64,000 nucleotides of DNA, taken from NCBI GenBank assembly GCA_964035545.1, contig OZ037770.1, forward strand, positions 124,001-188,000, given 5' to 3'. The position numbers and the translations under genes were made by a program. Positions 2,050 to 22,401 of this stretch are shown here, one piece after another. The notes under the pieces were generated by a model. It ran no database searches and had not been told where the DNA came from. It saw only the letters and a program-made list of their open reading frames with translations. The number at the start of each line of letters is the position of its first letter. Position 1 is the first letter of the stretch. This DNA is from Bugula neritina (taxonomy: Eukaryota > Animalia > Bryozoa).

Positions 2050-5000
2050 CTACCTTGCCCTCGCGGAAATTTGCTGCGGACCTTGAGGAGCTGCATTCAC
2101 AAGTGGCTTGTGGTAAGATGCGGTATTCTCTTGACTCGTAGCTACCGGAGGATTGTCCACTTCTAGTGCATCAGATTCAACATCCTCTCTAACAGAGACA
2201 GAGCTGTTCGTGTTGTGACTATACGGAGCAGTTTGCAGGTCTTCAGAGGAGACAATCCCCGCATACTCCACTCTACTAACCCTGCTAGTACGCCTGCTGC
2301 GGCTAGCCAGTGTACCGAGGTTGGCTATGTTGTTCTTTATGTAGTTGGTGCCCGTGACGGCACCATTGCCTGCTTTACTCACTGCACAGTTCAATGACTT
2401 GCTCTGAGCTTCACCTGTTTCCTTAGAAGACTTTACAGGGGACCTGTTTCTATACCCCCAACCTTGCTCCTGTGAACAACAGATCTACAGCTACAGCATT
2501 ACTATAGTATCTACTATATACTTACCTTACTATAGTATCTACTATATACTTACCTTACTATAGTATCTACTATATACTTACCTTACTATAGTATCTACTA
2601 TATACTTACCTTACTATAGTATCTACTATATACTTACCTTACTATAGTATCTACTATATACTTACTTAGTCCAATGAGGTAAGTATCAACTAGGTACTCA
2701 CTCTACTACGTACTTACTCTACTAGGTACTTACTCTACTAGGGACTTACTCTACTACGTACTTACTCTACTACGTACTTATTCTACTACGTACTTACTCT
2801 ACTAGAATGCTGACCAACTCTCACATTTCGACTCCTCACAGGTGACTGACTGGTCTTGTGTGGAGGAAGGGAAGTTTGAGCTGAGCCACCAGACGGCTTG
2901 TCACCACTGGGGTTAGACTGAGTTTCTAAACTATTGCTAATAGAGGTAGGCTGGTGAGCGGAAGCACTCGCAGACTTGGGGCAGGCATTGTACAGCATAT
3001 GGAAGGTTCCCAGGTTCTGTAGAGGTAGAAGGGGCTGGTTTTTCTTTGCTTTCTCAAAGCATTCCAACGCCAGATCTAAACATTATGGTAGGAAATGCTA
3101 CACTTTTCAGTATGCAACTTGAGAGTTGCCTTACTCTACATGTTAACTTTCTGTACAGTAATTTGGAGCAGATAACAGCAATTACCACAGGCCCAACTAA
3201 GGGTCAAAGTGGGTATTTACTATACCAGACTTACCAATAGTTCCAGCTAGAATGCCGGGTAAATTCTCTTTGAGTACTTCACAGTTTACGTGCATTGCAG
3301 GGTTTACATTGATCTCTATCAGCCAAATCTTCATATCGCTGTCTATCATGAAATCAAACCCGTAGATGTCAAACAAGCCTAGACGACTCTGAAGTTTATG
3401 CTTTACGCTGTTGAAGCAGTACTTCATGATTGCCTTTATCTGTTTCTACAACACAGCAAGAAAAGGTTATTTCTTCGACTAGCTGTTTGGTGAGAGAGTT
3501 ACAAAGTGTAGTATAGACTCTGATAGAGGATACGATATCAGCACACCTCAAAGTGGTTGAGCACCCAGTCTGTCTCTATGCCTTTCTCCTCCTCAACTGT
3601 TTCATTCACATACTGATTGAACTTCTCCATTGACCACACAGTGTCTTCCTTCATGTCTTTGTAATTCTCTACTTTCTTCTGCACATACTGTGAGTAGAAG
3701 TCAAATACCATTCGATATTGAAGCATCGGTTACCTACTCTATGAGTGAGTGAGTGAGTGAGTGAGTATTCAGTGAGAGAGTGAATGAGTGAGTGAGTATT
3801 CAGTGAGTGAATGAGTATTCAGTGAGAGTGAGTGAGTAAGTAAGTATTCAGTGAGAGTGAGTGAGTTAGTGAGTGATAATTGATCAGTAAAATGGTGCAA
3901 TTCAAGCTGCCAGTACTATTACCATGCTTACTGTATACAAGCTAAACATTGAGAGATGCATACAAACCTGATTGGTTAGATGAGTAGAAAGGTCAAGGCT
4001 ATCTAGATTATATTCCTCACACGTGACCCTGACATAACCTTTGTGATACAAGACAATGAACGGTAGAGTGCTGGGAATCATCATGTAAGCTCTGATATCA
4101 AATTTCTTCCTCTCCACGAGGAGGGGCTTCTCAATGTACCTCTGAACTATGAGAGGCATGAGTGGTTTGGTCCTCCTGGCCTGCTTCCTCTGCTCTCTGT
4201 CTGCCAGCATCTTATCTATCTGCTCCTGGGACCTGATCAGAAATATTCCTTTTCCTTGATTCAGTCCTGTTGGCTTGCAGATCCATATTTCTCCATCTGA
4301 AAATACGGTATACTATGTAGTGTGTACTGTATACTATGTAGTGTGTACTGTATACTATGTAGTGTGTACTGTATACCATGTAGTGTGTACTGTATACTAT
4401 GTAGTGTGTACTGTATACCATGTAGTGTGTACTGTATACTATGTAGTGTGTACTGTATACTATGTAGTGTGTACTGTATACTATGTAGTGTGTACTGTAT
4501 ACCATGTAGTGTGTACTGTATACCATGTAGTGTGTACTGTATATCATGTAGTATGTACTGTATACTATGTAGTGTGTACTGTATACCATGTAGTGTGTAC
4601 TGTATACTATGTAGTGTGTACTGTATACTATGTAGTGTGTACTGTATACCATGTAGTGTGTACTGTATACTATGTAGTGTGTACTGTATACTATGTAGTG
4701 TATACTGTATACCATGTAGTGTGTACTGTATACTATGTAGTGTGTACTGTATACCATGTAGTGTGTACTGTATACTATGTAGTGTGTACTGTATACTATG
4801 TAGTGTATACTGTATACCATGTAGTGTGTACTGTATACTATGTAGTGTGTACTGTATACCATGTAGTGTGTACTGTATACTATGTAGTGTGTACTGTATA
4901 CTATGTAGTGTATACTGTATACTATGTAGTGTGTACTGTATACCATGTAGTGTGTACTGTATACTATGTAGTGTGTACTGTACACTATGTAATACAAACC

Positions 5001-7156
5001 CTTGTAAACATCTAAAAAAGTTTCTCTGTCTTTCAGCTGATCAATTCTGTAGGTCTCAGGGACAAAGTCACTCATCTTCAGCTTTACGCGGTCCCCTTTG
5101 AGAGCCCCGACTACTCTGCTGTATTCACTGAGGCTATTATATAGCCCGAGTTTGTTGGTGAGTAAACTGCAGTTGGGTATTCGGTTTACCAGCTGTTCGC
5201 CATCTCTACAGTATGCAGTATATTCTATAGTATAGAGATAGCATGTGTATATATTCTAGGATATACAGTATATAAATAACATAGGAGTATATTCTAGGAT
5301 ATACAGTATAGAGATAACATAGGAGTATATTCTAGGATATACAGTGTATAAATAACATAGGAGTATATTCTAGGATATACAGTATATAAATAACATAGAA
5401 GTATATTCTAGGATATACAGTATATAAATAACATAGGAGTATATTCAAGCACCTGAAAGCACCGTAGTTCACCTGGCCATTCACTTCAATCCACTTGAGC
5501 TTCCAGTTGAAGTTCTGCTTGTCTGCAATTTTCTTCCAACCCAAAGAGTTTAAGTACGCATCAACACTAAATGAGTAGTAAAGAGTTATATAATATAATT
5601 TATGTAGAGTCATGTGCTATGTAGAGACATGTGCTATATAAAGTTATGTGCTATATAGGGTTATGTGCTATGTAGAGTCATGTGCTATATAGAGTTATGT
5701 GCTATGTAGAGTAATATAATATACATCACTTCCTGATATGCTACAAACTCAATGATCTATGTATTCTCAATAGAAAGATAGTGTATTAGAGTTTTTGGTC
5801 TTACATAGGGCCACCATTTCCCCCACAGATTTGGTAAGATGCCATGTTAGTTGGGAGACTCAACAGTTTTATCCGAGCATTGTGTTCTGCTTTACGCCTT
5901 CTTTTACGTCTTTTTTTAGGAGATGAATATTCTGAGAACTCAGCAACCTCTGTAAGTATTGCTAGTACTTGTAGCTCACACTGATTTCATCAAATTAGAA
6001 TTACAGTTCAACCTCGTAAAATCATCAAACATTGCGTGAGGTTGAATTCAAGTAATTAGTTTCAAAAGATCAGCTAGGACACTAAGTCAAAGTTGAGTCA
6101 AGCTCGTAACTATTCAAGTTGATTGCTAACTAAGCTGAATCTAGTCAAGTCCAAACAATATATTATTAATGTTGAGTTTGACAAAGACTTTACTTATTTT
6201 AATTAAATTTGAATTGATTTGCAATTATGTCTTTAATCAAGTCATTCGATGTCTTGCTCATTTACACATTGACATAAATTTAATAGAGAATAGTGCATCA
6301 ATTCAGAATAAAAAATATAAATTAAATTTAACTAGTACCGCCAGCTTGAAGTACTTGAAAATTTATACTTTAAGTTTTATTAATCATAAATTAAAATATA
6401 GCAACTATGATAGAATAAAATCATTTAATTTAATAGCTACTAAATCTTAATAAGCATTTAAGAATCATAGCATTAGTTTAAATAACATAGAAAAAAAACT
6501 TTCTTTGCCAGTTAATATTTAAATTTAATCCATATATTAAAATAATTCTCAAGACTTGCAGCAATTCAAGTCCAGTCAGTGAGTTACCAGCTTAACCATT
6601 TTAGCACGCTGATTTGGGCCCAAGTTTTTAATTAATTGAAACAGCCAATTCAACATCACTAAGATATTATATTGATTGAGACCTGGCAGTAACCGGCACT
6701 AAAACTAAAAGTCAAGACGGGCTCACAAAAATGGTTAAATCAGTGAGCAAAATCAAGATCCATAAACACAAAATGAAAATATCAATTACAAGAATAGCCG
6801 ATCTACTTGAGTTGCACAAAGCAGGGTCTAAGCTAACGTCATATGTTTGGTAGCAATACCGTTCACAATGACAAATCAATAACTTTAAGTTTATTTTAGT
6901 TTGAGTTTGTCAAAATGAAAATGTCAATCTCATTCACAATGACAATCACAATGCGAGTGATCACTAGCAGAATCAATAAACATCAGTATGATTGGGCTGG
7001 CAGTAAGCCTGTCGTAGACGTAATTACTGTTAACTTACCTGAGCAATATATTGACTCAATATTAGCAGTAGACTGATCCAAAAATATCTCTGCGGGAGTT
7101 TCAGCTTGTGCTCGATCTACCTCGTCTGCGGCGCATACACTAATACTTGTAGACAT
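2050..7156 (-). CDS. TTLL10: Tubulin polyglycylase TTLL10-like (TTL/ATP-grasp), multi-exon, about 653 aa
   Basis: Exons (minus strand, GT-AG, phases consistent): 7156-7039 ([15 protein letters not shown]..), 5949-5805 (..[10 protein letters not shown]), 5566-5453 (..WKLKWIE..YGAFR), 5205-5000 ([27 protein letters not shown]), 4296-3968 ([39 protein letters not shown]), 3687-3547 ([15 protein letters not shown]), 3445-3235 ([24 protein letters not shown]), 3075-2798, 2469-2050 (to TAG if the donor at 2053 is read through). GGNG, GEQL..IPN..LLT.K.GL, NQGKG and HLTNQ.QKK..TVW are TTLL10-type motifs. Confidence 0.9.
2498..2803. repeat. 28-bp and 16-bp intronic tandem repeats in TTLL10
   Basis: (TTACTATAGTATCTACTATATACTTACC)n followed by (TACTTACTCTACTASG)n; the latter includes the exon donor at 2797. 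Confidence 0.9.
4308..4990. repeat. 21-bp intronic minisatellite (GTATACYATGTAGTGTGTACT)n
   Basis: About 32 copies filling TTLL10 intron 4999-4297. Confidence 0.95.
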
Positions 7157-7417: not shown

Positions 7418-8554
7418 CATTGATGTGTCTGGTAATCACCCTTGTTATTTTAAGGCATTGAACTGTAGAGGACTTGTTTGATAAACCTGCGTGTAATTTA
7501 TTTAGTGCTCCATTATGTATCAGTGGTGCAGCTGAATGCTAGAGTAACGAAAATAATTATAAAGTAAATGTGATAAACTCGATGCAACATATTTAGTAAA
7601 AACTGAAAAAATACTTCTATGTTTTGACTTTTGAAAATAAACATGGCCCATTAAAAACTCAGCCAAATTAGTATACTAATTACTATTACTGCATCTTATT
7701 AATAAAAAGTAAAAGCATAATTCAACTGTTATTTATTTATGATTGTATCAGTCTTGTGATGTATCTTCATGTCTATGAAACTGAAATTACTCTGTTGTGC
7801 ATAGTCCATGACGTTAACAGTGGTTAAAATCATTGAAATATAAATTTCAACACATGCAGTGGTTACAATGCTATGAAACCACAACCGTGAGAGACTATAG
7901 TTAAATGGAGCCTGCAGTTGAAGGTGGGCAGTTCTTAATTTTTATAAACCTACTATGTATGCCTACAAGTTTATAAACCTTCCTAATGCAACTCTGGCGC
8001 TGTGGGCGGAGCCTCAGACCACACCTAAATTCATTATATTATTTAACATGTTTTGCTGGCTGATTGGCTATATGTTGAGCTAGAGAGGAAAAATACGCCT
8101 AGAGATATCTGGTCCGTTATGTTTTTGTACCAAGTCATGATGCAAGTAGAGATATTACATTTCATATGTATTGTATACATATAAGAATATTTAACCAAAC
8201 AACATAGGATAAAATTAAATAAAGAATTGAGAAGAGCAGAGTGATTGTCACAAACTTTTCAATTCAAAAGTTCAACTGAGCATGAAGAGTGAGTACCAGT
8301 ACAGGTAAGTCTAGGAAAAAGGAATAATTTAATAATATATAGTACAATATAACAGTAATATAAAAAGAATATAATACAATAATAATATAGAAAGAATATG
8401 ATACAATAATAAAAGTGATATAATACTAATAGTTGTATGTAATAATGTAATGTAATAGTATTTAGCCAGCTAAATATTATAATATAACATTTATTGTTCT
8501 GAAATGATAAGTTTTGCAAAATAAAAAATTTTGCTGGGGACAAATATTTGTGTT

Positions 8555-11500
8555 TCATAAAATAATCTCTCTAGTCTGAGTTCCAACAGTACTCTCTCTA
8601 GTCTGAGTTCCAACAGTACTCTCTCTAGTCTGAGTTCCAACAGTACTCTCTCTAGTCTGAGTTCCAACAGTACTCTCTCTAGTCTGAGTTCCAACAGTAC
8701 TCTCTCTAGTCTGAGTTCCAACAGTACTCTCTCTAGTCTGAGTTCCAACAGTACTCTCTCTAGTCTGAGTTCCAACAGTACTCTCTCTAGTCTGAGTTCC
8801 AACAGTATTCTCTCTAGTCTGAGTTCCAACAGTACTCTCTCTAGTCTGAGTTTCAACAGTACTCTCTCTAGTCTGAGTTCCAACAGTACTCTCTCTAGTC
8901 TGAGTTCCAACAGTACTCTCTCTAGTCTGAGTTCCAACAGTACTCTCTCTAGTCTGAGTTCCAACAGTACTCTCTCTAGTCTGAGTTCCAACAGTACTCT
9001 CTCTAGTCTGAGTTCCAACAGTACTCTCTCTAGTCTGAGTTCCAACAGTATTCTCTCTAGTCTGAGTTCCAACAGTACTCTTTCTAGTCTGAGTTCCAAC
9101 AGTATTCTCTCTAGTCTGAGTTCCAACAGTATTCTCTCTAGTCTGAGTTCCAACAGTATTCTCTCTAGTCCGAGTTCCAACAGTATTCTCTCTAGTCTGA
9201 GTTCCATCACTAAACGCATGCTGAGCGGGCAGAGGCCAACCCTCATCTAATGGAAATAACAGTTACAATATACAGCATAATGCACAGAGAAAGTATAAAC
9301 TGCAGAAATATAAAGAAGCAGAAAGAGCAAGCTGCAGGATATACCTTCACTCTCAGTACCGCTGGCGTCTTCATCTGGTGGACAGGAAGTGCTTGTGTCT
9401 GTCTGTTCGGGTTTGTGGGTGAAGAATATTGATTTCTCGGAGGGAATGAAGTGATGAGTCAGTTTCCAAGGGTGTGCGTCGCAATGACTATAAATATAGA
9501 CATATTATATTACTATATTATCATATTACTATATTATTATATTACTGTATTATTGTATTACTATATTATTATATTACTATATTATTGTATTACTATATTA
9601 TTATATTACTATATTATTGTATTACTATATTATTATATTACTATATTACTATATTATTATATTACTATATTATTGTATTACTATATTATTGTATTACTAT
9701 ATTATTATATTACTATATTATTGTATTACTATATATATTATATTACTATATTATTGTATTACTATATTACTATATTATTATATTACTATATTATTATATT
9801 ACTATATTATTGTATTACTATATTATTATATTATTATATTATTATATTACTATATTATTATATTACTGTATTATTGTATTACTATATTATTATATTACTA
9901 TATTATTGTATTACTATATTATTATATTACTATATTACTATATTATTATATTACTATATTACTATATTATTATATTACTATATTATTGTATTACTATATT
10001 ATTGTATTACTATATTATTATATTACTATATTATTGTATTACTATATATATTATATTACTATATTATTGTATTACTATATTACTATATTATTATATTACT
10101 ATATTATTATATTACTATATTATTGTATTACTATATTATTATATTATTATATTACTATATTATTATATTACTGTATTATTGTATTACTATATTATTATGT
10201 TACTATATTATTGTATTACTACATTACTATATTATTATACTATTAAACATAGCCAACCTTTTGCACTCTCCACTCAGCCATGTGTCAATGGATTTGAAGA
10301 TGTAAGTTGGGGAATGATAACTCCTAGCTTCAAACTTGTAGCTCTTGTGTATCTCCACATGGCCACGCTGCCATCTGGCTCCTATAGTCTTCTCTCCTTC
10401 ACCCAACCAAATCTCAACGTGTACAATATCGTGTTTCTGTCTTTTACCTAGTTACAGTATTATAGTATATAGTATATAACATATAGTATAGAGTATATAG
10501 TAAGTAGCGGATATAGACTCACATCTAGGGTTGTAGTAAGTAGCGGATATAGACTCACATTTAGGGTTGTAGTAAGTAGCGGATACAGACTCACATTTAG
10601 GGTTGTAGTAAGTAGCGGATATGAACACCAGATCTCCTGGCAGCATGTCAGCTTCATGCTCCACTCTGATTGGCAGAGTGTCGTACTGGTAGGCTTGGTT
10701 CCACGGCCCAAACTCGAACCCAAAATCATCCTTTAGATCTCTAACTATTTTCCTGACAAGACCGCAGCAGTCAAGGAAGAGTTGAGAGTTATATTCAGCT
10801 TCTGAAGAGAAGACAATACACTAGTAGTTGTCCTCTCAATATATTGTATAGTCGGACAACTCTCAGCACACGAGTAGTTGTCCTCTCAACATACCGTATA
10901 GTAGGACAACTCTCAGCACACGAGTAGTTGTCCTCTCCACATACCGTATAGTAGGGCAACTCCCAGCATACTAGTAGTTGTCCTCTCAACATACTGTATA
11001 GCAGGACAACTCCCAGCACACGAGTAGTTGTCCTCTCAACATACTGTATAGCAGGACAACTCCCAGCACACTAGTAGTTGTCCTCTCAATATACCGTATA
11101 GTAGGACAACTCCCAGCACATATCACACTAGACTGCTAGAGTATCTCTTACCATCTTCACTCCAGTAACGTCTGGCGTAAGGAACACCAAAGTACTTCTT
11201 AGCCTGACCTACAAACTTCTCTCTCAACTTTTGTTTGTATTCTGCTGTGTGGGTGTCTCTTATTGCTGCTTCTCTTGACACTCTTGCTGTCTCTACTGCT
11301 GCCTATGAAACCAGAAAACTACCACTAGTAGGACTACAGTACACCTCCTCCAGTATACAATAATACACAATGGTACACAGGTGTATATTACTATTTCCAA
11401 CAGTGCACGTGTAAAAACCTTATATAACCTCAGAATTTACCAGGGTAGTCCAGGTAAAATATGTCGTAATAGAATGCCTCACCAACATGGCTTCATGGAA

Positions 11501-21500: not shown

Positions 21501-22401
21501 CATTAGTTAAAGGCAAAATGATATATATTAGCAGCTAGAGTTCAATAAAGTAGGCAACATTAATAAATTTATTGTGTGCTAAATAAATGAAGCATGTTTT
21601 ATACTACAAAAACTGCATGGCATAATAATAATAATAATAATAAATATATATTATATAACTTAACAATCTAAATTGAATATATTTTTAAACTCCGCAGTAA
21701 TAATTGTAACAAATAAATTTTACTGTGGAAAGAAAATGTTTAGTCTGTAATAAAGGACATAAACCATAAATTATGATTAATTGTAATATAATAAGTTATA
21801 ATTAATTTAAATAGAATAAATTACAATTAATTTTAATAGAATAAATTACAATTTATTAACATATGGAATAAAATACAATTTAATTATCTAATAGCTGTCA
21901 GCTGATTGTATAATTAACAAGTAACCAATCACTTACCCTTCGGAGAACTGTACACTCGGTCATCAGTGACGTGGGTAGACAATTTTCTGCTCAGCTTGTT
22001 AGACTACTCGTCTATAGCTGGTAGACTATGTTGCCTTGTGTGGGGGAGTCACCGATTAATAATACAAACATACAAACCGCGATTTTCTACGACTCTTTGA
22101 ACTCGACAAATATTTATTTTAACACACCGTAGCATTTCTACACGATATTCTAAATGGTAAAAAATATAGCGTCTGTCAACACTATATCAAGACAGGGTGT
22201 TACAATCAAACAACAAGGTGATATAAGGTGAAGTTCTGTGCCAATTATGTAACTGATAACTATAACTATAACTAAAACTTATATTACCTGTCGCCTCTTT
22301 TTGTAGTCCAAAAACGACTGCTGCAGGGAAGTTTGTTGAGGGTTGTTCGCTCTGCTCTCATCAAAAGGCACAACAAAACCAAAATCTCCAGGACTATCCA
22401 T
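8555..22401 (-). CDS. NlpC/P60 (papain-like cysteine peptidase fold) protein with C-terminal TQT repeat array, about 498 aa
   Basis: Exons: 22401-22288 (MDSPGDFGFVVPFDE..SLQQSFLDYKKRRQ, phase 0; least certain), 11302-11152 (..LREKFVGQAKKYFGVPYARRYWSED), 10801-10595 (LFLDCCGLVRKIV..NQAYQYDTLP..LPGDLVFIS), 10447-10258 (HDIVHVEIWLGEGEKTIGARW..IDTWLSGECK), 9487-9345 (SHCDAHPW..), 9246-8555 (DEGWPLP..(ESTVGTQTR)n..IIL*). The pattern G-x-PY, DC-x-GLV, PGDLVF, HV-x-I-x-x-G..I-x-A is the canonical NlpC/P60 signature with catalytic Cys and His. Confidence 0.8.
8567..9205 (-). repeat. 27-bp tandem repeat, 24 units; in the spliced frame encodes (E-S/N-T-V-G-T-Q-T-R)n
   Basis: Minus-strand unit GAGAGTACTGTTGGAACTCAGACTAGA. 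The frame is fixed by the phase-1 splice from 9345 to 9246; stop TGA at 8557-8555 and AATAAA at 8495-8490. Confidence 0.9.
9503..10240. repeat. AT-rich degenerate (TATTACTATATTAT)n intronic repeat
   Basis: Fills intron 10257-9488; source of the Y/I/L-rich ORFs. Confidence 0.95.
10820..11120. repeat. 46-bp intronic tandem repeat, about 6 copies
   Basis: Unit CACGAGTAGTTGTCCTCTCAACATACCGTATAGTAGGACAACTCYCAG-like, with an internal inverted repeat (AGTTGTCC..GGACAACT). Confidence 0.9.
11575..12075. repeat. 26-bp homogeneous minisatellite (TATAATACTTATGAGTATACTTGTAT)n
   Basis: About 19 near-identical copies. Confidence 0.95.
12631..12705 (-). CDS. Alternative 5' coding exon of the NlpC/P60 gene (MILRIGLAGGWQDGLTLMKAERLSR)
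   Basis: Open 75-nt frame ending at an AGG|gtatag donor in phase 0, compatible with the acceptor at 11302; internal AG acceptors at 12694 (phase 2) and 12680 (phase 1). Confidence 0.55.
12945..13182. repeat. 23-bp minisatellite (CATTACCTAGTAGTTATACTTTAT)-like
   Basis: About 10 copies. Confidence 0.9.
13328..13340. promoter_or_regulatory. RFX X-box at an internal promoter of the NlpC/P60 gene
   Basis: GTAACCTAGCAAC, about 90 bp upstream of candidate first exon 13240-13194; adjacent CRE-like GACGTCA. Confidence 0.55.
14494..15160. repeat. 16-bp GC-rich repeat (GCACCCCTGCTCTGCG)x7 and GA-rich (GTAGGTGGAGAGAGA)n tract
   Basis: Two arrays at 14494-14608 and 14727-15160. Confidence 0.9.
17590..19600 (+). 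mobile_element. Highly decayed non-LTR retrotransposon (LINE) reverse-transcriptase remnant
   Basis: Broken motifs resembling F.DLEKAF (about 18515-18540), R.A.V (about 18688) and YADD-like LYADKLLLE (18983-19009), in the expected order, with many stops and frameshifts. A possible APE remnant (LRVLND) at about 15540. Confidence 0.35.

What the first reader, a model, noticed from the sequence alone, without database searches (positions are those of the whole stretch)
8555..9246. Hidden reading frame: minisatellite encodes 23 tandem TQT motifs (multivalent LC8/DYNLL-binding array)
Seen: the ORF track reads this repeat as LLELRLERV, but the phase-1 splice from 9345 sets a different frame, DEGWPLPAQHAFSDGTQTRE(N/S)TVGTQTRE..IIL*. 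This gives 24 units of 9 aa (23 TQT, 1 TRT), a stop at 8557-8555 and AATAAA about 60 nt downstream. Established: [x]-G/E-T-Q-T is the classical anchor motif for the LC8 dynein light chain, multivalent TQT arrays occur in ASCIZ/ATMIN and Nup159, and LC8 is abundant in axonemes. Inference: a disordered LC8-polymer tail could dimerise, rigidify or tether the peptidase in cilia. It could have arisen by recent repeat expansion, since the units are nearly identical at DNA level.
Basis: partly seen in the sequence, partly recalled or inferred. Interest (0 to 1): 0.85.

Follow-up and report, generated by a model that had tools for sequence, protein, structure and literature searches.

The report
Repeat-encoded TQT tail on a peptidase
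A 27-base tandem repeat in a moss-animal (bryozoan) genome is spliced into the last coding exon of a peptidase gene and would give the enzyme a tail of 23 near-identical TQT motifs, the docking signal of the dynein light chain LC8; binding itself is untested.

Summary
A 27-bp minisatellite lies at 8566-9206 (23.7 copies, 98% alike). On the minus strand it reads as 24 nonapeptides (23 TQT, 1 TRT), with a stop at 8557-8555 and AATAAA at 8495-8490.

RNA-seq contigs from a roughly 7%-diverged relative join 9345 to 9246 (GT..AG, 98 nt removed). One 411-nt contig runs exon C, exon D, exon E and into the first repeat unit. All exon phases fit one open frame of about 498 aa.

The host protein is an NlpC/P60-fold cysteine peptidase from an uncharacterised animal family with long, unconserved tails. 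None of 150 homologues carries a TQT array, so the array is lineage-specific.

The unit (S/N)TVGTQTR meets most published LC8 rules. It differs at one position from the predicted CFAP91 site STVGTQTD. The genome's LC8 is about 96% identical to mammalian DYNLL2.

Two features argue for caution. Arg at +2 is disfavoured. The 9-residue period leaves a 1-residue linker, shorter than any described (3-5).

LC8 binding, translation of the whole array and a ciliary location are all inferred. Verdict: a real coding repeat and a plausible but unproven multivalent LC8 client. Other first-reader notes in this scan flag further TQT arrays elsewhere in this genome.

The parts
22288..22401 (-). Probable first coding exon of the peptidase gene (38 codons, starts MDSPGDF, ends KKRRQ; GT donor at 22287; phase 0). 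It has no signal-peptide-like start.
   Evidence: Sequence. Weak tblastn match to homologues' N-termini. The phase fits exon A. Not confirmed by RNA.
11152..11302 (-). Exon A: helical N-terminal part of the peptidase domain (contains KKYFGVPYARRYW).
   Evidence: tblastn to homologues; AG/GT sites and phases.
10595..10801 (-). Exon B: NlpC/P60 core with the invariant catalytic-type Cys (FLDCCGLV).
   Evidence: Pfam NLPC_P60 below cut-off. 70-78% identity to many animal proteins. Invariant columns.
10258..10447 (-). Exon C: NlpC/P60 core with the invariant His (HVEIW).
   Evidence: tblastn. An RNA contig joins its 3' end to exon D (loose end at 9489).
9345..9487 (-). Exon D: conserved CxxHxW / KSIF segment and the start of the tail. 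Ends in phase 1.
   Evidence: RNA contigs at 93% identity. 5 of the 7 listed differences are synonymous in this frame.
9247..9344 (-). 98-nt GT..AG intron between exons D and E. If retained, the frame stops at TAG 9249-9247.
   Evidence: Joint 9345->9246 in runs X2 and X3. An unspliced contig is also present in X2. Read-through translation.
8555..9246 (-). Terminal coding exon E: 13 unique residues, then 24 nonapeptides (23 TQT), then the stop.
8566..9206 (-). 27-bp minisatellite, 23.7 copies, 98% alike.
   Evidence: Single locus in the genome.
8490..8495 (-). AATAAA poly(A) signal 60 nt after the stop.
   Evidence: Sequence. The 3' end was not mapped.
2915..5598 (-). Neighbouring gene on the same strand: TTL-domain exons closest to the TTLL10 / TTLL3 glycylase type. 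Context only, not part of the tail.
   Evidence: tblastn with the TTL half of the Tubulanus fusion protein P0026. The best PDB match is TTLL3, entry 5vlq. Atlas neighbours are TTLL10-like.

Best explanation
The minisatellite is the coding body of the last exon of a cytosolic NlpC/P60-fold cysteine peptidase gene (about 498 aa; exons at 22401-22288, 11302-11152, 10801-10595, 10447-10258, 9487-9345 and 9246-8555, minus strand). In other animals this family ends in a long, acidic, unconserved disordered tail. Here that tail is built from 24 copies of a nonapeptide created by recent expansion of a 27-bp unit. Each copy presents (S/N)TVGTQTR, a TQT-anchored 8-mer of the kind that inserts as a beta-strand into the groove of the LC8 (DYNLL) dimer. 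The most likely consequence is that LC8 dimers bridge two tails in parallel. Probably not every site is used, because the sites are only 9 residues apart; about every second site, roughly 12 dimers, is the safe estimate. This would turn a floppy tail into a dimeric, stiffened ladder that dimerises the peptidase or docks it onto LC8-rich structures. Because all sites are identical, out-of-register pairing and heterogeneous assemblies are expected. Shown: the repeat, the frame, the splice, the fold of the host domain, and the presence of conserved LC8. Inferred: translation of the whole array, LC8 binding, stoichiometry, and any role at microtubules or cilia.
For: Repeat and frame. All five junctions are AG/GT and in phase, and the only stop is at the end. 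RNA: a 411-nt contig in X3 joins exon C to D to E and runs about one unit into the repeat. X2 has a spliced contig (depth 222) and an unspliced one (depth 111). The relative's differences look like coding constraint. In exon D, 5 of the 7 listed changes are synonymous. In exon E there is a 6-nt insertion exactly between codons (adding Q-P). Host: the AF2 model of the family domain (pLDDT 80) matches only NlpC/P60 hydrolases (RipB, MepS, SagA, LytE; Foldseek prob 1.0), and Cys and His are invariant. Family architecture with unconserved tails. Motif: TQT anchor; -2 G/E allowed; -3 V is the minimum favoured size; -4 T is polar. Nearest listed sequences are STVGTQTD in human CFAP91 (LC8Pred 22.7 and 4.4 against thresholds 12.9 and 0.1), the verified binder SEVGTQTS (FAM83D), the phage-display optimum VSRGTQTE, and the verified QSTCTQTR with Arg at +2. 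LC8: a full-length gene in this genome, 81 of 84 aligned residues identical to DYNLL2. Precedents for LC8 ladders: RSP3 in axonemes, ASCIZ, KANK1 and Nup159. Context: the next gene on the same strand is TTLL10-like, and homologues in other phyla are fused to such a TTL domain.
Against: No binding, proteomic or localisation data exist. Arg at +2 is disfavoured: Pro, Asp and Glu are preferred, none of 374 LC8Pred human sites has Arg or Lys at +2, and a Lys-+2 peptide is a listed non-binder. The linker between 8-mers is 1 residue, while the known minimum is 3. No TQT array occurs in 150 homologues, so the feature is not conserved. All four kinds of difference between units are non-synonymous, and there are too few to show selection. 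The contigs stop inside the first unit, so the full array and the 3' end were not seen in RNA. An unspliced form that would end the protein before the array also exists. This genome makes minisatellites everywhere, and the DNA word ACTCAGAC recurs in non-coding arrays.
Confidence: 0.5

Rival explanations
1. Neutral coding minisatellite. The repeat is transcribed and translated as a disordered tail, but TQT is an accident of the unit's sequence. The tail has no selected LC8 role, and any LC8 binding is absent or incidental. The family tolerates almost any tail.
For: Homologues' tails are unconserved in length and sequence and lack TQT. The units are 98% identical, so the expansion is recent and little tested by selection. 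Arg at +2 and the 1-residue linker are atypical for LC8 sites. The genome is saturated with minisatellites. ACTCAGAC-containing non-coding arrays exist at several other loci. The scan looked at very many repeats, so a look-elsewhere effect applies.
Against: Seven of eight positions equal a top-scoring predicted LC8 site. With 23 copies even weak sites gain avidity, as the KANK1 precedent shows. The splice and an in-frame indel are kept in a 7%-diverged relative.
Confidence: 0.3
2. Exon E is a minor or non-productive 3' end. The main product ends before the array, either by intron retention (stop at 9249-9247 after a hydrophobic 33-residue extension) or by continuing into the downstream TTLL10-like exons as a peptidase-ligase fusion, as in nemertean homologues.
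For: An unspliced contig across 9227-9374 has about half the depth of the spliced one in X2. Fusion proteins exist in other phyla, and the TTL exons lie 3 kb downstream on the same strand.
Against: No contig leaves the exon D donor for any other acceptor; the only joint is to 9246. The unspliced contig may be pre-mRNA or DNA carried over into a 'metagenomic RNA-Seq' library. Exon E has its own stop and AATAAA.
Confidence: 0.12
3. The tail works through something other than LC8. It could be a self-folding beta-rich repeat with a TxT surface, or an extreme S/TQ cluster phosphorylated by ATM/ATR-type kinases.
For: The best AF2 single-sequence model is all-beta with pLDDT 69. There are 23 TQ dipeptides within 207 residues.
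Against: The five AF2 models range from pLDDT 24 to 69, which is typical of unreliable predictions on perfect repeats. Nine residues is too short for a solenoid turn. Mean hydropathy is below the Uversky disorder boundary at zero net charge (hand calculation on the unit). Nothing links this cytosolic peptidase to DNA-damage signalling.
Confidence: 0.05

Closest known systems
ASCIZ/ATMIN LC8-binding domain
   Same: A disordered region with many TQT-anchored 8-mers that bind LC8 dimers to form parallel duplex ladders. It includes a verified site with Arg at +2 (dASCIZ QSTCTQTR).
   Different: ASCIZ has 7 sites in fly and 11 verified (16 predicted) in human. Its motifs are heterogeneous and its linkers are 3-41 residues. 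It is a transcription factor that senses LC8 level. Here there are 23 near-identical motifs with 1-residue linkers, made by a minisatellite, on a peptidase.
KANK1 L2 and Nup159 DID LC8 rods
   Same: Short, uniform linkers and many sites turn a disordered chain into a stiff LC8-studded rod. KANK1 carries at least 15 dimers and Nup159 about 5.
   Different: Their linkers are 3-5 residues. KANK1's motifs are weak and non-canonical. Here the anchors are canonical but the spacing is tighter than anything described.
RSP3 N-terminus (radial spoke) and CFAP91
   Same: These are axonemal proteins with TQT-type sites. The RSP3 LC8 stack forms the spoke base and helps dock it to doublets. The predicted CFAP91 site STVGTQTD equals the bryozoan unit at 7 of 8 positions.
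   Different: RSP3 has 5 sites at intervals of 17-31 residues, and they are conserved across phyla. The bryozoan array is lineage-specific, and its ciliary location is only a guess.
Repeat-built tyrosine-motif tail of bryozoan receptors (scan note s1-441686)
   Same: Same genome. The last exon is an in-frame minisatellite, and each copy adds one short linear motif to a cytoplasmic tail.
   Different: A different motif (YxxM/ITIM-like), a 39-bp unit and a different gene family. I did not check that note.

Membership tests
Multivalent LC8 (DYNLL) client | TQT-type anchor at positions -1, 0 and +1 | tested here: met
   23 TQT and 1 TRT in 24 units. A charged residue in the anchor abolishes binding, so the TRT unit is expected to be dead.
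Multivalent LC8 (DYNLL) client | Flanks obey the Jespersen 2019 rules (-4 polar, -3 at least Val-sized, -2 not a bulky aromatic, +2 Pro/Asp/Glu preferred and not hydrophobic) | tested here: inconclusive
   Positions -4 T, -3 V and -2 G (or E) pass. Position +2 is Arg: not hydrophobic, but absent from all 374 LC8Pred predictions and present in only one training binder. LC8Pred itself could not be run.
Multivalent LC8 (DYNLL) client | Motifs lie in an intrinsically disordered, accessible, cytosolic region | tested here: inconclusive
   The composition is 31% Thr with no aromatics. The AF2 models disagree, with pLDDT from 24 to 69. There is no signal peptide in the probable first exon. Homologues' tails are low-complexity.
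Multivalent LC8 (DYNLL) client | Spacing allows neighbouring LC8 dimers | tested here: inconclusive
   The period is 9 residues, an 8-mer plus a 1-residue linker. The shortest described linkers are 3 residues (dASCIZ QT2-3, KANK1) and 4-5 (Nup159).
Multivalent LC8 (DYNLL) client | The organism has LC8 with a conserved groove | tested here: met
   PF01221 hit at 147 bits. 81 of 84 aligned residues are identical to DYNLL2.
Multivalent LC8 (DYNLL) client | Direct binding to LC8 | not testable with these tools
   Needs ITC, pull-down or a multimer prediction. Only single chains can be folded here.
NlpC/P60 (papain-like) peptidase, host domain | Sequence match to the family model | tested here: inconclusive
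   Pfam PF00877 scores 16-20 bits against a cut-off of 23. The profile against PDB gives E=0.0097 to a dipeptidyl-peptidase VI.
NlpC/P60 (papain-like) peptidase, host domain | NlpC/P60 fold with conserved Cys and His | tested here: met
   The AF2 model of the family domain was built on the Mya arenaria homologue, not the bryozoan protein. All of its top Foldseek matches are NlpC/P60 hydrolases. Cys55/56 and His118/122 are invariant in 18 sequences, and the bryozoan exons carry them.
Protein-coding terminal exon | Spliced in frame in RNA, with a stop and a poly(A) signal | tested here: met
   The joint 9345->9246 appears in two runs of one sample. Neither the 3' end nor the whole array was seen in RNA.

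The most novel reading that the evidence does not exclude
A copy-number-variable minisatellite has recently created the most highly valent canonical LC8 array known (23 TQT sites). It sits on an NlpC/P60 peptidase that is genomically paired with, and in other phyla fused to, a TTLL10-type tubulin polyglycylase. LC8 zips two tails into a ladder whose length is set by repeat number. The ladder dimerises the enzyme and docks it on axonemal or other microtubule structures. This would be a live example of a motif array being born by repeat expansion and tuning the reach of a tubulin-code enzyme.
Probability: 0.2. Interest if true: 0.75.

Novelty: new variant of a known kind. Interest (0 to 1): 0.55.

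Why it matters
If the tail binds LC8, it is a natural, perfectly uniform multivalent client with identical motifs and identical minimal linkers. LC8 biophysicists build this kind of test case artificially to study cooperativity, register and rod formation. It would also show how a short linear motif array can arise in one step from a minisatellite, and then vary between individuals. It would tie an uncharacterised animal NlpC/P60 peptidase, already linked by gene order and fusion to a tubulin glycylase, to an LC8-rich compartment. If it does not bind, it is a clean example of how permissive disordered tails are to coding repeat expansion in this repeat-rich genome.

Tried and rejected
As the tool advised, I laid 8960-9500, which has fewer copies. 

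2. Runs X1 and X14 (metatranscriptomes) gave no contigs on the stretch.

3. The search for homologous proteins with exon E (229 aa) found nothing at E<=0.01. The length window of 126-400 aa and the low complexity limit what this blank means.

4. A genome-wide DNA pattern for three periodic TQT codon triplets gave 2145 matches against 1160 for the reversed control. The listed matches are almost all non-coding CA-rich or ACTCAGAC minisatellites, so the count says nothing about coding arrays.

5. The TRF null sample (264 kb) held only 10 arrays with a period divisible by 3. That is too few for a rate of TQT arrays.

6. AF2 on the tail alone gave an unstable beta-rich model, which I did not use for fold search.

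7. Pfam and NCBIfam on single exons gave only sub-threshold NlpC/P60 hits.

8. A literature search for NlpC together with tubulin or TTLL returned no paper holding both.

LC8Pred-style scoring was not rebuilt, because it would need a long typed list of peptides.

Full report
**What is there**

TRF reports a 27-bp array at 8566-9206 with 23.7 copies, 98% matches and no indels. It is one of roughly seventy arrays in this 64-kb window. The scan's earlier notes describe the genome as a Bugula-type bryozoan crowded with intronic minisatellites.

- On the minus strand, one frame is full of stops.
- A second frame reads LLELRLERV and starts with an ATG at 9246.
- The third frame, starting at 9244, reads EGWPLPAQHAFSD followed by 24 nonapeptides and TGA at 8557-8555.
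- The units are 15 GTQTRESTV, 5 GTQTRENTV, and one each of GTRTRENTV, GTQTRKSTV, ETQTRESTV and GTQTREIIL. That gives 23 TQT and one TRT.
- AATAAA lies at 8495-8490.
- The array occurs once in the 216-Mb assembly.

**Is the frame real?**

An open frame is not evidence by itself. In 264 kb of this genome, 10 of 43 arrays (period at least 9, at least 5 copies) have a period divisible by three, and 22 of their 60 frames are open. The gene model and the RNA data decide the matter.

- Upstream on the minus strand lie exons at 11302-11151, 10801-10595, 10447-10258 and 9487-9345. All have AG/GT borders.
- Their phases chain into exon E at 9246 in exactly the TQT frame, and the only stop is at the end.
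- A probable first exon at 22401-22288 (38 codons, GT donor, phase 0) completes a protein of about 498 aa.

I laid public RNA-seq contigs on 8960-9500.

- In two runs from one sample (X2 and X3, a symbiont RNA-Seq study), contigs join 9345 to 9246. The 98 nt removed have GT..AG ends on the minus strand.
- One 411-nt contig carries the end of exon C, all of exon D, the junction, and exon E into the first repeat unit. It stops there, as a short-read assembly would at a repeat.
- Two intron-less joints in a single contig show the material is cDNA.

The contigs are about 93% identical to the window, so they come from a sibling lineage.

- In exon D, five of the seven listed differences are synonymous third-position changes in my frame.
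- In exon E there is one F-to-L change and a 6-nt insertion exactly between two codons.

Three limits remain.

- The body of the array and the 3' end were not seen in RNA.
- Both runs come from one sample.
- An unspliced contig across the intron exists at about half the depth of the spliced one. If translated, it would end at TAG 9249-9247 after a hydrophobic extension.

**The host protein**

- Exon B alone finds 427 proteins in the 1.8-billion library at up to 78% identity.
- They form an uncharacterised animal family (clam, paddlefish, nemertean; all named 'uncharacterized').
- The family layout is a basic N-terminus, a domain of about 170 residues, a CxxHxW segment, and a long acidic low-complexity tail that is not conserved.
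- Pfam sees NlpC/P60 only below its threshold. A profile hits a PDB dipeptidyl-peptidase VI at E=0.0097.
- An AF2 model of the domain (pLDDT 80) matches only NlpC/P60 hydrolases such as RipB, MepS, SagA and LytE. The model was built from an 18-sequence alignment whose first row is the Mya arenaria homologue, not the bryozoan protein.
- A Cys and a His are invariant.

The peptidase label is therefore sound at the level of fold.

- None of the 150 best homologues has more than one TQT, and none has one at a conserved place in its tail. The array is a lineage-specific replacement of the usual tail.
- Some homologues (Tubulanus, 1066 aa) are fused to a C-terminal TTL domain.
- That TTL part aligns to 5598-2915 on the minus strand, directly downstream of the TQT exon.
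- Its best solved relative is the glycylase TTLL3. Its nearest Atlas clusters are TTLL10-like.
- A separate first-reader note (s1-451016) describes this same pairing, and my independent check agrees with it.

This gives the only support, and it is indirect, for placing the enzyme near microtubules or cilia.

**Does the unit look like an LC8 site?**

The bryozoan has a full-length LC8 gene. It is identical to mammalian DYNLL2 at 81 of 84 aligned residues, so motif rules derived from mammalian and fly LC8 should transfer. The rules below are from Jespersen et al. 2019 (PMC6607443).

| Position | Rule | Residue here | Result |
|---|---|---|---|
| -1, 0, +1 | TQT anchor; a charged residue kills binding | TQT in 23 units, TRT in 1 | ideal; the TRT unit should be dead |
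| -2 | anything except a bulky aromatic | G (E in one unit) | passes |
| -3 | side chain at least as large as Val | V | just passes |
| -4 | polar | T | passes |
| +2 | prefers Pro/Asp/Glu, dislikes hydrophobics | R | atypical |

- In that paper's tables, human CFAP91 carries STVGTQTD. This is identical to the bryozoan unit at seven of eight positions and scores 22.7 and 4.4 against thresholds of 12.9 and 0.1.
- SEVGTQTS (FAM83D) is a verified binder, and VSRGTQTE is the phage-display optimum.
- The weak point is +2. None of the 374 predicted human sites has Arg or Lys there. Only one training binder does (dASCIZ QSTCTQTR), and NAQVTQTK appears among the non-binders.

I could not run LC8Pred. 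I judge single-site binding plausible but probably not strong. With 23 copies, avidity could compensate, as it does for the individually non-binding KANK1 motifs.

**Geometry**

- The 8-mer plus one residue makes the period 9.
- The shortest linkers described are 3 residues (dASCIZ QT2-3, where neighbouring LC8 dimers already touch and off-register species form), 3-4 residues (KANK1) and 4-5 residues (Nup159).
- KANK1's 15-dimer rod spans just over 50 nm, about 3.3 nm per dimer. Nine fully extended residues give about 3.1 nm.
- I therefore infer that adjacent sites cannot all be filled. Roughly every second site, about 12 dimers per duplex, is the safe estimate.
- Because every site is identical, nothing fixes the register, so heterogeneous or networked assemblies are likely.

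This last part is inference, not a result.

**Rivals**

- Neutral coding minisatellite with an accidental TQT (0.3). It is favoured by the lack of conservation, the recent expansion, the atypical +2 and spacing, and the sheer number of repeats in this genome and in the scan. ACTCAGAC-bearing non-coding arrays occur at several loci, though by my rough count not far above expectation.
- Exon E as a minor 3' end (0.12). This rests on the unspliced contig and the fusion precedent. However, no contig leaves the exon D donor for another acceptor.
- Self-folding beta repeat or an S/TQ kinase-target cluster (0.05). The AF2 model of the tail is all-beta, but its five models range from pLDDT 24 to 69.

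**Comparison and verdict**

The array works like the LC8-binding domains of ASCIZ, Nup159, KANK1 and RSP3. It meets the anchor criterion and most of the flank criteria for that class. Binding is untested, and two features fall outside known limits.

I file it as a new variant of a known kind: a minisatellite-encoded, perfectly uniform, potentially 23-valent TQT array on a new kind of client. Other first-reader notes flag three more TQT arrays, one of them minisatellite-encoded, elsewhere in this genome. I did not test them.

Steps left out: the joined spliced protein was never searched or folded, and all work was exon by exon by reference.

Noticed in passing
window 2915-5598 (-), and proteins P0026 and P0030: A TTL-domain gene lies directly downstream of the peptidase gene on the same strand. 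Its best PDB match is the glycylase TTLL3, and its Atlas neighbours are TTLL10-like. In a nemertean and other animals the two are one fused protein (NlpC/P60 plus TTL, about 1040-1070 aa). This suggests the peptidase acts in the tubulin glycylation or glutamylation cycle.
   Followed up: partly
window 10498-10622 (-): A 36-bp repeat (3.5 copies) in the intron after exon B duplicates the last 18 nt of the exon together with its GT donor. This creates in-frame decoy donors. Use of a later copy would insert 12 residues (CESxSATYYNPK) per copy.
   Followed up: no
window 9247-9344 (-): If the last intron is retained, the frame reads a 33-residue, largely hydrophobic extension and stops at the TAG that forms the acceptor. 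An unspliced contig exists in run X2 at about half the depth of the spliced one.
   Followed up: partly
G000 contigs C258:19120-19371, C194:15625-15864, C15:29499-29741, C83:1790-2049 (loci L004, L005, L007-L009): LC8-like matches on small contigs contain in-frame TAA/TAG but no TGA. This is the pattern of a ciliate-type genetic code, so these may be contaminant or commensal ciliate contigs in the assembly.
   Followed up: no
G000:C1:239592-239768, 425415-425803, 2674347-2674441, 4877085-4877176: The DNA word ACTCAGAC(T), which encodes TQT in the array, also recurs in unrelated non-coding minisatellites with periods of 13, 23 and about 30 bp.
   Followed up: partly
window 9503-10245 and 10818-11120: Every intron of this gene carries its own private minisatellite (16 bp x 46 copies, 50 bp x 6, 36 bp x 3.5). 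Only the one in the terminal exon is coding.
   Followed up: no
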